This document shows, piece by piece, positions 32,088 through 34,921 of a stretch of 64,000 nucleotides of DNA. Source of the stretch: Octopus sinensis (taxonomy: Eukaryota); NCBI RefSeq assembly GCF_006345805.1, contig NC_042997.1, positions 25,916,001 to 25,980,000 of the forward strand, written 5' to 3'. The notes under the pieces were generated by a model. That model was not told the DNA's origin, searched no databases, and saw only the letters and a list, made by a program, of their open reading frames with translations. Numbering within the stretch: position 1 is the stretch's first letter; each line of letters begins with the position of its first letter. Made by a program: the position numbers and the translations under genes.

Positions 32088-34921
32088 ATTATATAAAAGG
32101 GCTTAGTAAAATAAATTACTTAGCCGCATACTGAACTCATTAGAAATAGCAGCTAAAAAACTTTTTTAAGGCTATTTCTAATACTTAAAGAAAATCTCTC
32201 TCATATATAGTGTTTGCATAATTTAACTCACAAAAGTTTGGGGGTAATGACATCGAAAAATCAAATGCTAAGGTTATTCGAGAACGTACGTTTCAAGATT
32301 AGTCAAAACAATTTCTATCATCGGCTCGGAAATCCTTGTTTGGATTTGGAAACACTGAAAAAAGAACATACCCTCTCGAAGATCTGCTCCCAATAACAGT
32401 GTCAACAAATTCAAAATAAGCAAGCGAAGAATCTCTGTTCTCCCCTTTCCACCAGCGGGTTAAAATCATCAAACTCTATGCTTATTTCGGTAAAGTCCGA
32501 AGCATTAATCAGAGGGAGATTAATTATAATTTCAACAATTGAGGGCAAAATTAATTAATTATTAATCAATTTCACCAAGTGTTCAGTATGCAAAGGGACC
32601 ATTCAAGGCGAATTCAATTATTACATTATAAAAAGGCTTAGTAAAATAAATTACTTAGCCGCATACTGAACTCATTAGAATAGCAGCTAAAAAACTTTTT
32701 TAAGGCTATTTCTAATACTTAAAGAAAATCTCTCTCATATATAGTGTTTGCATAATTTAACTCACAAAAGTTTGGGGGTAATGACATCGAAAAATCAAAT
32801 GCTAAGGTTATTCGAGAACGTACGTTTCAAGATTAGTCAAAACAACATTCTATCATCGGCTCGGAAATTCCTTGGTTTGGATTTGGAAACACTGAAAATA
32901 AGAACATACCCTCTCGAAGATCTGCTCCCAACTAACAGTGTCAACAAATTCAAAATAAGCAAGCGAAGAATCTCTGTTCTCCCCTTTCCCCAGCGTGGGT
33001 TAAAATCATCAAACTCTATGCTTATTTCGGTAAAGTCCGAAGCATTAATCAGAGGGAGATTAATTATAATTTCAACAATTGAGGGCAAAATTAATTAATT
33101 ATTAATCAATTTCACCAAGTGTTCAGTATGCAAAGGGACCATTCAAGGCGAATTCAAATTATTACATTATATAAAAGGGCTTAGTAAAAAATTACTTAGC
33201 GCATACTGAACATTAGAAATAGCAGCTAAAAAACTTTTTTAAGGCTATTTCTAATACTTAAAGAAAATCTCTCTCATATATAGTGTTTGCATAATTTAAC
33301 TCACAAAAGTTTGGGGGTAATGACATCGAAAAATCAAATGCTAAGGTTATTCGAGAACGTACGTTTCAAGATTAGTCAAAAAACATTTCTATCATCGGCT
33401 CGGAAATTCCTTGGTTTGGATTTGGAAACACTGAAAATAAGAACATACCCTCTCGAAGATCTGCTCCCCCAACAACAGTGTCAACAAATTCAAAATAAGC
33501 AAGCGAAGAATCTCTGTTCTCCCCTTTCCACCAGCGTGGGTTAAAATCATCAAACTCTGCTTATTTCGGTAAAGTCCGAAGCATTAATCAGAGGGATTAA
33601 TTATAATTTCAACAATTGAGGGCAAAATTAATTATTATAATCAATTTCACCAAGTGTTCAGTATGCAAAGGGACCATTCAAGGCGAATTCAAATTATTAC
33701 ATTATATAAAAGGGCTTAGTAAAATAAATTACTTAGCCGCATACTGAACTCATTAGAAATAGCAGCTAAAAAACTTTTTTAGGCTATTTCTAATACTTAA
33801 AGAAAATCTCTCTCATATATAGTGTTTGCATAATTTAACTCACAAAAGTTTGGGGGTAATGAATCGAAAAATCAAAAATGCTAAGGGTATTCGAGAACGT
33901 ACGTTTCAAGATTAGTCAAAACAACATTTCTATCATCGGCTCGGAAATTCCTTGGTTTGGATTTGGAAACACTGAAAATAAGAACATACCCTCTCGAAGA
34001 TCTGCTCCCAACTAACAGTGTCAACAAATTCAAAATAAGCAAGCGAAGAATCTCTGTTCTCCCCTTTCCACCAGCGTGGGTTAAAATCATCAAACTCTAT
34101 GCTTATTTCGGTAAAGTCCGAAGCATTAATCAGAGGGAGATTAATTATAATTTCAACAATTGAGGGCAAAATTAATTAATTATTAATCAATTTCACCAAG
34201 TGTTCAGTATGCAAAGGGACCATTCAAGGCGAATTCAAATTATTACATTATATAAAAGGGCTTAGTAAAATAAATACTTAGCCGCATACTGAACTCATTA
34301 GAAATAGCAGCTAAAAAACTTTTTTAAGGCTATTTCTATACTTAAAGAAAATCTCTCTCATATATAGTGTTTGCATAATTTAACTCACAAAAGTTTGGGG
34401 GTAATGACATCGAAAAATCAAATGCTAGGTTATTCGAGAACGTACGTTTCAAGATTAGTCAAAACAACATTTCTATCATCGGCTCGGAAATTCCTTGGTT
34501 TGGATTTGGAACACTGAAAATAAGAACATACCCTCTCGAAGATCTGCCCAACTAACAGGTCACAAATTCAAAATAAGCAGCGAAGAATCTCTGTTCTCCC
34601 CTTTCCACCAGCGTGGGTTAAAATCATCAAACTCTATGCTTATTTCGGTAAAGTCCGAAGCATTAATCAGAGGGAGATTATTATAATTTACAATTGAGGG
34701 CAAAATTAATTAATTATTAATCAATTTCACCAAGTGTTCAAGTATGCAAAGGGACCATTCAAGGCGAATTCAAATTACATTATATAAAAGGCTTAGTAAA
34801 ATAAATTACTTAGCCGCATACTGAACTCATTAGAAATAGCAGCTAAAAAACTTTTTTAAGGCTATTCTAATACTTAAAGAAAATCTCTCTCATATATAGT
34901 GTTTGCATAATTTAACTCACA
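32088..34921. repeat. Tandem array of five ~540-bp units plus a 143-bp partial unit
   Basis: Unit starts at 32088, 32625, 33166, 33701, 34247 and 34779; differences are mostly 1-3 bp indels; both ends lie in (TA)n. Confidence 0.95.

What the first reader, a model, noticed from the sequence alone, without database searches (positions are those of the whole stretch)
32088..34921. A-B-A-B-A tandem array whose A module is related to a transposon-like end
Seen: the array has six copies of a 143-bp module A and five copies of a ~400-bp module B. It starts and ends with A, both ends in (TA)n. A contains a hairpin (ATTAGAAATAGC..GCTATTTCTAAT), and GCATACTGAAC in A is inverted as GTTCAGTATGC at the end of B. 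A aligns by eye with the arms of the 56604-56919 element. Inference: an A-B-A element (terminal-repeat, PLE pseudo-LTR-like or rolling-circle) was amplified in tandem, i.e. a satellite arising from a mobile-element end. The indel-dominated unit differences look like long-read error, so the true copy number may differ.
Basis: partly seen in the sequence, partly recalled or inferred. Interest (0 to 1): 0.7.

Follow-up and report, generated by a model that had tools for sequence, protein, structure and literature searches.

The report
Tandem repeat seeded by a transposon end
A 2.8-kb block of about 5.3 nearly identical head-to-tail copies of a 546-bp non-coding unit sits inside a (TA)n microsatellite, and each unit begins with a sequence related to the inverted ends of a small transposon 22 kb away: an ordinary, early-stage case of a transposon fragment turning into a small satellite-like repeat.

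Summary
Positions 32088-34921 carry five full units (532-546 nt, consensus 546) plus a 140-nt sixth start, bounded on both sides by (TA)n.

"A-B-A-B-A" is only another way of writing 5.26 copies of one unit.

The first ~60 nt of each unit are related to both terminal inverted repeats of the 316-nt MITE at 56604-56919:
- 72-77% identity.
- Reciprocal best non-self hits in the window.
- 0 of 1000 shuffles reach the alignment score.
- A shared 10-mer, TAGAAATAGC, occurs nowhere else in the window.

The rest of A and all of B have no relative in the window. The GCATACTGAAC inverted match is near chance, so the unit has no convincing second inverted end.

No LTR, Helitron, ribozyme, RNA-family or coding hallmarks were found. 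No related sequence turned up in any public collection I could search.

Unit differences are almost all singleton indels, whereas other repeats in the window differ mainly by substitutions. The true copies are therefore probably identical and locally unpolished.

Best reading: a transposon-end-bearing segment lying in a TA tract was duplicated out of register, then expanded by unequal exchange. It is a new member of a known kind and of low interest.

The parts
31992..32087 (.). Left flanking impure (TA)n tract. Its last ~26 nt (TATATATATATATACATATATTATAT) recur at 93% identity to the right of the array.
   Evidence: TRF row 31992-32095; direct-repeat family D13
32088..34921 (+). Whole tandem array: 5 full units plus a 140-nt start of a sixth; consensus unit 546 nt.
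32093..32232 (+). Unit 1, part A. The first ~60 nt are like a terminal inverted repeat (TIR), followed by a 44-nt hairpin.
32233..32627 (+). Unit 1, part B (anonymous, non-coding).
32628..32766 (+). Unit 2, part A.
32767..33170 (+). Unit 2, part B.
33171..33305 (+). Unit 3, part A.
33306..33705 (+). Unit 3, part B.
33706..33844 (+). Unit 4, part A.
33845..34251 (+). Unit 4, part B.
34252..34389 (+). Unit 5, part A.
34390..34783 (+). Unit 5, part B.
34784..34921 (+). Unit 6, truncated after part A (...AACTCACA) and joined directly to (TA)n.
32139..32182 (+). Hairpin of part A (copy in unit 1): 12-bp outer stem ATTAGAAATAGC/GCTATTTCTAAT and a 6-bp inner A/T stem.
   Evidence: (I1)
34922..34990 (.). 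Right flanking impure (TA)n tract. It contains a second copy of the last 13 nt of A (AATTTAACTCACA, 34940-34952), the result of a 31-nt tandem duplication of the junction between the array end and the TA tract.
   Evidence: TRF rows 34887-34970 and 34907-34972, period 31
56604..56919 (.). 316-nt MITE-like element, palindromic over its whole length. Its left end abuts a (TA)35 tract.
56604..56654 (+). Left terminal inverted repeat of the MITE, ending in TAGAAATAGCA. It is 75% identical to the start of A.
56867..56919 (-). Right terminal inverted repeat of the MITE. It is 72-77% identical to the first ~62 nt of every A copy.
20266..20309 (-). Possible third, weak relative of the inner part of the TIR (CATACTGA...TAGAAATTGCAGC).
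   Evidence: nhmmer with a profile of the three TIR-like sequences, E 0.012; sequence

Best explanation
A non-coding segment of about 530 nt lay inside a (TA)n microsatellite. Its left end is the terminus of a non-autonomous DNA transposon of the same family as the MITE at 56604-56919.

The segment was first duplicated head to tail by out-of-register recombination or replication slippage, using the TA-rich sequence at its two edges. Unequal exchange between the now-homologous 546-nt units then raised the copy number to five and a bit.

The last unit was later cut back to its first 140 nt by a further small rearrangement in the TA tract. The array is very young or continually homogenised, since the true copies are probably identical. 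Nothing indicates that it moves as a block or has a function. It is a proto-satellite made from a transposon end.

Shown: the array, its edges, the TIR homology, the absence of a second TIR, and the absence of coding or RNA signals.
Inferred: the order of events and the recombination mechanism.
For: 1. Both array edges and the left edge of the related MITE coincide with edges of (TA)n arrays. Only 0.83% of window positions lie within 5 nt of such an edge.
2. The unit-to-unit junction (...TTATTACATTATAT|AAAAGGGC) ends in TA-like sequence that matches the left flank for 7 nt. It also resembles the right flank, TATTACATATAA.
3. The 26 nt just left of the array recur at 93% identity just right of it (D13), as expected if one TA tract was split or copied.
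4. The right edge carries a separate 31-nt tandem duplication of [last 13 nt of A + TA spacer]. That is the same kind of event at small scale, at this very locus.
5. Homology of the unit start to the MITE arms:
   - Local alignment score 35 against 18.1 +/- 2.9 for shuffles; 0 of 1000 shuffles reach it.
   - blastn E from 2.9e-6 to 3e-3 for the right arm and 1.5e-4 for the left arm; these are reciprocal best non-self hits.
   - The 10-mer TAGAAATAGC occurs 12 times, all in A copies or the two MITE arms, against 0.26 expected.
   - The order of features is the same: terminus TAARGGNTTAG, a small internal palindrome, CATACYGAA, then a hairpin starting at TAGAAATAGC.
6. The unit lacks a convincing right-hand TIR, so it is unlikely to transpose on its own.
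7. Units differ almost only by singleton indels, so no old divergence is visible.
Against: - The truncated sixth unit needs an extra event under this model. An original A-B-A element would explain both edges at once.
- The similarity between the unit's end and the flank is short and low-complexity.
- No empty site, single-copy version or other genomic copy could be examined, so the starting state is unknown.
- The homology to the MITE is 72-77% over only ~60 nt, and single-sequence nhmmer gives only E 0.075.
Confidence: 0.45

Rival explanations
1. The ancestor was a small element with direct terminal repeats (A-B-A), such as a TRIM-like miniature LTR element, a non-autonomous Penelope-type element with pseudo-LTRs, or two same-orientation insertions of an A-like element 400 bp apart. 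Recombination between the A copies then produced A-B-A-B-A with shared A modules.
For: - It explains without any extra event why the array starts and ends with a complete A, directly against (TA)n.
- Tandem LTR elements with shared LTRs are a documented route (PMC5932611, Fig. 1A, read).
- A ends in CA.
- A TGG lies 7 nt after A's end (AAAGTTTGGGGGTAATGAC), and a short purine run AAAAGGG overlaps the start of each A copy.
- The MITE arms (~158 nt each) are similar in size to A, so A-like modules may occur in both direct and inverted pairs.
Against: - A does not start with TG.
- The putative primer-binding site could not be matched to any tRNA; there is none in the window.
- No hammerhead or other ribozyme was found at E <= 1, and no CUGANGA core is present.
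- The inner boundary of A matches nothing in the MITE.
- The start of A is homologous to an inverted repeat of a class II-type element, not to an LTR.
- B has no coding remnant.
Confidence: 0.17
2. The array is a concatemer made by rolling-circle replication. Either a 546-nt extrachromosomal circle was copied and reintegrated in the TA tract, or Helitron-like replication started at the element's left end and repeatedly missed its terminator. The second route gives arrays with many 5' ends and no 3' end.
For: - The units are essentially identical.
- The array contains six left ends and no right end.
- Arrays of truncated Helitrons with multiple 5' ends and at most one 3' end are described, as are arrays with transposon parts on one side only (review PMC12628747, read).
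- Palindromes in the unit could promote such events.
Against: - No Helitron hallmarks: no 5'-TC, no 3'-CTRR, and no hairpin 10-12 nt from an end, at either the array or the unit boundaries.
- The related element is a classic long-TIR MITE.
- A random circle would not be expected to open exactly at a transposon terminus.
- There is no evidence of other arrays.
Confidence: 0.12
3. The 546-nt unit is a complete non-autonomous transposon whose right inverted repeat has decayed. Two copies inserted into the same TA target gave a tandem dimer, which expanded by unequal exchange.
For: - The unit starts at a TIR-like terminus next to TA.
- GCATACTGAAC lies 33 nt from the left end, and its inverse lies 39 nt from the right end. 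That symmetric placement is reached by only 70-102 of 2000 shuffles.
- Double insertion at preferred targets is the main source of transposon dimers in Drosophila, and a hobo dimer expanded to 13-19 copies (PMC5932611).
Against: - Outside the 11-mer the two ends do not align. The unrestricted test gives p of about 0.1, while the MITE control scores 37 against 6.6.
- The outermost nucleotides of the two ends are unrelated.
- The truncated sixth copy needs an extra event.
Confidence: 0.1
4. The array is largely an assembly artefact: the true locus holds one or two units, or a very different number.
For: - The indel density in the array (49 indel bases in 2.8 kb, nearly all singletons, not homopolymer-biased) is far above that seen between other repeat copies in the window.
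- This region was therefore not polished like the rest.
Against: - Assemblers rarely invent five ordered head-to-tail copies.
- A 2.8-kb array is shorter than ordinary long reads.
- Unpolished noise is exactly what is expected when true copies are identical and short reads cannot be placed.
- The flanks are unique and differ from each other.
Confidence: 0.08

Closest known systems
Tandem arrays of DNA transposons and other TEs that seed satellites (for example the hobo array and P-element dimers in Drosophila; McGurk and Barbash 2018, PMC5932611)
   Same: Head-to-tail copies containing a transposon terminus; few copies; euchromatin-like, TE-rich surroundings; expansion by unequal exchange.
   Different: There the unit is a complete element with both ends and a target-site duplication in the junction. 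Here only one TIR-like end is detectable, and the junction is TA-like sequence that cannot be read as a target-site duplication.
Tandem-repeat-containing MITEs and their derived satellites (DTC84 / pearl in bivalves, PMC3879986; Xstir and miDNA4 in Xenopus, as summarised in PMC12628747)
   Same: A MITE family linked to a short tandem array (up to about 5 repeats), a microsatellite at the array end, palindromes in the repeats, and AT-rich microhomologies proposed as the driver.
   Different: In those elements the repeats are internal and flanked by left and right arms with inverted repeats. Here the TIR-like end is itself part of every repeat, there is no right arm, and the unit (546 nt) is longer than the related MITE (316 nt).
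Arrays of truncated Helitrons with multiple 5' ends (Xiong, Dooner and Du 2016) and one-sided Helitron/satellite 'intermediate' arrays in oysters (both as summarised in PMC12628747)
   Same: [quoted passage not shown]
   Different: No Helitron or Helentron termini here, and the related element has 50-nt inverted repeats.
Tandem LTR or TRIM elements with shared terminal repeats
   Same: The formal A-B-A-B-A layout, starting and ending with A.
   Different: No TG...CA; no verified primer-binding site or polypurine tract; A is homologous to an inverted repeat of a class II-type element.
Tetris foldback transposon and its satellite in Drosophila virilis (PMC4079207)
   Same: Terminal-repeat sequence of a DNA transposon supplying the building block of a tandem repeat.
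   Different: Tetris repeats lie inside long inverted arms. No inverted array partner exists within the window here.

Membership tests
Satellite-like tandem repeat (TE-derived) | Head-to-tail copies of a unit longer than 100 bp | tested here: met
   5 full units plus one partial unit of 546 nt, 96-98% identical as assembled
Satellite-like tandem repeat (TE-derived) | Part of the unit homologous to a transposable element | tested here: met
   The first ~60 nt match both MITE arms: 0 of 1000 shuffles reach the score; blastn E down to 2.9e-6; private 10-mer seen 12 times against 0.26 expected
Satellite-like tandem repeat (TE-derived) | Many copies or several loci in the genome (satellite DNA in the strict sense) | not testable with these tools
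   One locus in the window. No related DNA in the metagenome, viral or prokaryote collections. The source genome is not in the protein collection.
MITE (the array or the unit as a MITE) | Terminal inverted repeats at both ends | tested here: not met
   Unit ends: free alignment p about 0.1; symmetric band p about 0.035-0.05, against a control score of 37 vs 6.6. The array's right end is a direct copy of A, not an inverted one.
MITE (the array or the unit as a MITE) | Target-site duplication | tested here: inconclusive
   Both flanks are (TA)n, so a TA, TAA or longer duplication cannot be told from the microsatellite
MITE (the element at 56604-56919) | Short non-coding element with terminal inverted repeats | tested here: met
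   316 nt; ~50-nt arms with alignment score 71; whole-length inverted similarity E 2.7e-12; DNA fold z -8.5
Tandem-repeat-containing MITE (pearl / DTC84 type) | Core repeats internal to left and right arms that carry the inverted repeats | tested here: not met
   The TIR-like sequence is inside every repeat, and there is no right arm
LTR retrotransposon / TRIM | Terminal direct repeats beginning TG and ending CA | tested here: not met
   A begins (TA)TAAAAGGGC and ends ...CTCACA: CA is present, TG is absent
LTR retrotransposon / TRIM | Primer-binding site complementary to a tRNA 3' end, and a polypurine tract | tested here: inconclusive
   A TGG lies 7 nt after A, and a 7-nt purine run lies at the start of each A. 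There is no tRNA of this organism to compare with.
Penelope-like element / retrozyme | Hammerhead ribozyme in the terminal repeat or tandem unit; reverse transcriptase for autonomous copies | tested here: not met
   No Rfam family at E <= 1 on either strand of 31900-35300. No CUGANGA core in the unit. No ORF above 92 codons and no protein match.
Helitron / Helentron tandem array | 5'-TC and 3'-CTRR ends with a hairpin 10-12 nt before the 3' end | tested here: not met
   Neither array edge nor the unit junction shows these motifs. The hairpin lies 49 nt from the end of A.
Foldback element (Tetris type) | Long inverted arms built of the tandem repeats | tested here: not met
   No inverted copy of the unit anywhere in the window apart from its own short hairpin

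The most novel reading that the evidence does not exclude
The array was made by the transposition machinery itself. Replication or strand transfer would start at the TIR-like left end of a cut-and-paste-type family and repeat without a second end (one-ended or rolling-circle-like). On that reading the locus is a snapshot of a satellite being born directly from a transposon terminus, with (TA)n tracts as the preferred landing and recombination substrate in a microsatellite-rich, probably crustacean, genome.
Probability: 0.1. Interest if true: 0.5.

Novelty: new member of a known kind. Interest (0 to 1): 0.22.

Why it matters
If the reading is right, this is one more example, in a little-studied microsatellite-rich genome, of the first step from transposon to satellite. 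It shows a few identical copies, one transposon end per unit, and microsatellite sequence as the recombination substrate.

That fits published reports that transposons and simple repeats travel together in penaeid shrimp genomes (PMC7878876). However, the organism was not established here.

Practically, the locus marks a spot where assembly polishing failed and copy number should be checked. It would probably be a length-polymorphic marker. It does not open a new question.

Tried and rejected
Near chance level.
- **A as a self-contained palindromic mini-MITE.** No symmetry beyond the central hairpin; 1447 of 2000 shuffles do as well.
- **Homology of the 3' part of A to the MITE arms, including the shared TAACTCACA 9-mer.** Not significant.
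- **Known RNA families, ribozymes, tRNA.**
  - Nothing in the window at gathering thresholds.
  - In the array region at E <= 1, only microsatellite-driven miRNA-model noise.
  - No tRNA.
- **Coding capacity.** The longest open frame of the consensus is 92 codons. A search of the four longest frames against 5.8 billion proteins gave nothing.
- **Relatives of B in the window.** None.
- **Relatives elsewhere.**
  - The A/TIR pattern gave 0 hits in metagenome, viral and prokaryote-genome contigs.
  - The MITE TIR 20-mer gave two hits in metagenomes that do not extend beyond 20-29 nt, in contigs of 48% and 61% GC, so they are chance. It gave none in viral contigs.
- **Reaching more of the source genome through its retrotransposon ORFs.** The best protein match is 66% identical. 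Exact look-ups found none of seven ORFs. The two contigs fetched carry no related DNA.
- **Sequence strings in the literature.** Only unrelated primer matches.
- **Classifying the MITE's superfamily from its target-site duplication.** TA, TAA/TTA, TTAA and a 9-nt candidate were all examined by eye. None is decidable in the AT-rich flanks.
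Full report
**1. What is there**

The window is eukaryotic, about 35% G+C, and crowded with simple repeats. Arrays of period 6 or less cover 9.5% of it, including 24 (TA)n arrays. It also holds fragments of non-LTR retrotransposons, with weak Pfam endonuclease and zf-RVT matches, and tRNA-derived SINEs. This resembles published penaeid shrimp genomes, which have 35.7-36.5% G+C and 19-24% simple repeats (PMC7878876). I could not establish the organism.

At 32088-34921 there is a tandem array:
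- Five full units and the first 139-140 nt of a sixth.
- No further copy in the window.
- Unit lengths as assembled are 535, 543, 535, 546 and 532 nt. The consensus is 546 nt.
- TRF missed the array only because its period limit was 500.

The left flank matches the end of a unit for 7 nt (ATTATAT, 32088-32094) and then diverges. The array stops at ...AACTCACA (34921) and runs straight into (TA)n.

**2. A and B**

An array of 5.26 units necessarily starts and ends with the same part of the unit. So "six A, five B" restates the copy number. A earns an independent meaning only if both its borders do.

Its outer border does (section 3). Its inner border does not. The stretch of A after the hairpin is not significantly similar to either arm of the 56.6-kb element; 476 and 959 of 3000 shuffles reach the observed score. 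A is also not symmetric around its hairpin.

**3. Relation to the element at 56604-56919**

That element is a 316-nt MITE:
- About 50-nt terminal inverted repeats, alignment score 71.
- Weaker inverted similarity over its whole length, E 2.7e-12.
- DNA fold of -54.6 kcal/mol against -23.7 +/- 3.6 for shuffles.

The first ~60 nt of A align with its right arm:
- Score 35 against 18.1 +/- 2.9 for dinucleotide shuffles; none of 1000 reach it.
- With a permissive blastn scoring, the right arm matches all six A copies at 72-77% identity, E from 2.9e-6 to 3e-3.
- The left arm matches at 75%, E 1.5e-4.
- These are the best non-self hits of the MITE in the window, and the MITE arm is the best non-self hit of A. 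Single-sequence nhmmer is weaker, E 0.075.

Three further points support homology:
- The alignments begin at the terminus of both elements, although each terminus was defined independently.
- The 10-mer TAGAAATAGC occurs 12 times in the window, only in A copies and the two MITE arms, against 0.26 expected.
- The order of features is the same: terminus TAARGGNTTAG; a small palindrome inside the repeat (GCTTAGTAA...TTACTTAGC in A, AGCAAC-AA-GTTGCT in the MITE); CATACYGAA; then a hairpin beginning at TAGAAATAGC.

A profile of the three sequences finds one more weak candidate at 20266-20309, E 0.012. I conclude that each unit starts with a diverged copy of this family's terminal inverted repeat.

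**4. What the unit lacks**

Its extension is reached by 205 of 2000 shuffles. A test restricted to symmetric positions is reached by 70-102 of 2000, while the MITE control scores 37 against 6.6. A vestigial right end cannot be excluded but is not shown.
- *No coding capacity.* There is no open frame above 92 codons, and no match among 5.8 billion proteins.
- *No RNA family.* No Rfam hit at E <= 1, including hammerhead ribozymes, and no tRNA.
- *No relative of B* in the window.
- *No hallmark ends.* By direct reading there is no TG at the start of A, and no 5'-TC or 3'-CTRR at any boundary.

**5. The differences between units**

Against the consensus there are 45 deleted and 4 inserted bases. 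At most 17 positions look like substitutions, and most of those sit next to gaps. Only one variant is seen in more than one unit.

The deleted bases are not enriched in homopolymers: 19, 13 and 8 in runs of 1, 2 and 3 or more, against a background of 44%, 28% and 28%.

Four copies of a ~390-nt SINE elsewhere in the window differ by 17-22 mismatches but only 2-3 gap positions in three of the six pairwise comparisons. The other three pairs, all involving the copy at 26005, show 12-17 mismatches and 15-17 gap positions in 2-4 gap openings.

So the window as a whole is not indel-noisy, but the array is. The simplest reading (inference) is that the true copies are identical. Short reads then could not be placed during polishing, and raw long-read errors remained. 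It also argues that the array is very young or homogenised.

**6. The edges and the likely mechanism**

Both array edges and the MITE's left edge coincide with edges of (TA)n arrays. Only 0.83% of positions lie within 5 nt of such an edge.

- The junction between units ends in TA-like sequence (TTATTACATTATAT). It matches the left flank for 7 nt and resembles the right flank.
- The 26 nt left of the array recur at 93% identity right of it (D13).
- The right edge carries a 31-nt tandem duplication of [the last 13 nt of A + TA spacer]. This is a small-scale event of the same type.

From this I infer the following sequence. A transposon-end-bearing segment embedded in a TA tract was duplicated by out-of-register pairing in the TA-rich edges. 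It was then expanded by unequal exchange, and the last unit was truncated by another rearrangement.

Published routes to tandem transposons are recombination between terminal repeats, rolling-circle copying of a circle, and double insertion at one target (PMC5932611). AT-rich microhomology and Helitron 5'-end arrays are also described (PMC12628747). Each remains possible here with lower weight. The A-B-A route is the strongest rival, because it explains both edges without an extra event.

**7. Comparison and verdict**

Transposon-derived tandem repeats and MITE-linked short arrays with an adjoining microsatellite are well known (PMC3879986, PMC4079207, PMC5932611, PMC12628747). This locus differs in detail:
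- The inverted-repeat sequence is inside every unit.
- Only one kind of end is present.
- The unit is longer than the related MITE.

It fits the known kind, and no function is indicated. No related sequence could be retrieved from any collection available here. The decisive questions therefore remain open: are there dispersed A, A+B or A-B-A copies; what did the empty site look like; and what is the true copy number.

Noticed in passing
window 26005-26382, 38029-38415, 42212-42603, 50050-50439: Four copies (91-95% identical) of a ~390-nt tRNA-derived SINE. The head is GGCGCAATGGCCCAGTGGTTAGGG...GGTTTCGATTCCC. The copy at 42212 is flanked by an 11-nt direct repeat, AATGCTTGATG, that looks like a target-site duplication.
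   Followed up: partly
window ~35068-35190, minus strand: A tRNA-like stretch with box A / box B-like motifs (GGTGGTGTAATGGTAGCAC ... GGTTCGAGTTCATGC) 150 nt right of the array. It is probably the head of another SINE or a tRNA pseudogene. ARAGORN and Rfam do not call it.
   Followed up: partly
window 20266-20309, minus strand: Weak match (E 0.012) to the inner half of the TIR profile (CATACTGACTCC...TAGAAATTGCAGCC), next to a non-LTR endonuclease fragment. It may be a third, decayed member of the MITE family.
   Followed up: partly
window 32330-32425 and the same part of each unit (unit positions 243-337): Part B contains a 96-nt imperfect palindrome of its own (60 of 96 positions, E about 1e-4 within the unit). 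It may be the remnant of another small foldback or MITE nested in the unit.
   Followed up: no
window 34887-34972: A 31-nt tandem duplication of the junction between the end of the array and the (TA)n tract (AATTTAACTCACA plus TA spacer, about 2.1-2.8 copies).
   Followed up: yes
whole window: Very high simple-repeat load: 9.5% in arrays of period 6 or less, with 24 (TA)n arrays plus long (ATAG)n, (AAT)n, (AC)n and (GAA)n. There are also many fragments of non-LTR retrotransposons (endonuclease and zf-RVT traces at 241-1974, 6333-7007, 14071-14523, 20367-20759, 62363-63087). This is compatible with a decapod crustacean genome, but the organism was not identified.
   Followed up: partly
window 3454-4191 vs 14003-14781; 17630-18277 vs 41505-42168; 12569-12952 vs 24384-24765: Further dispersed repeat pairs at 78-79% identity, presumably older transposable-element copies. 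Not characterised.
   Followed up: no
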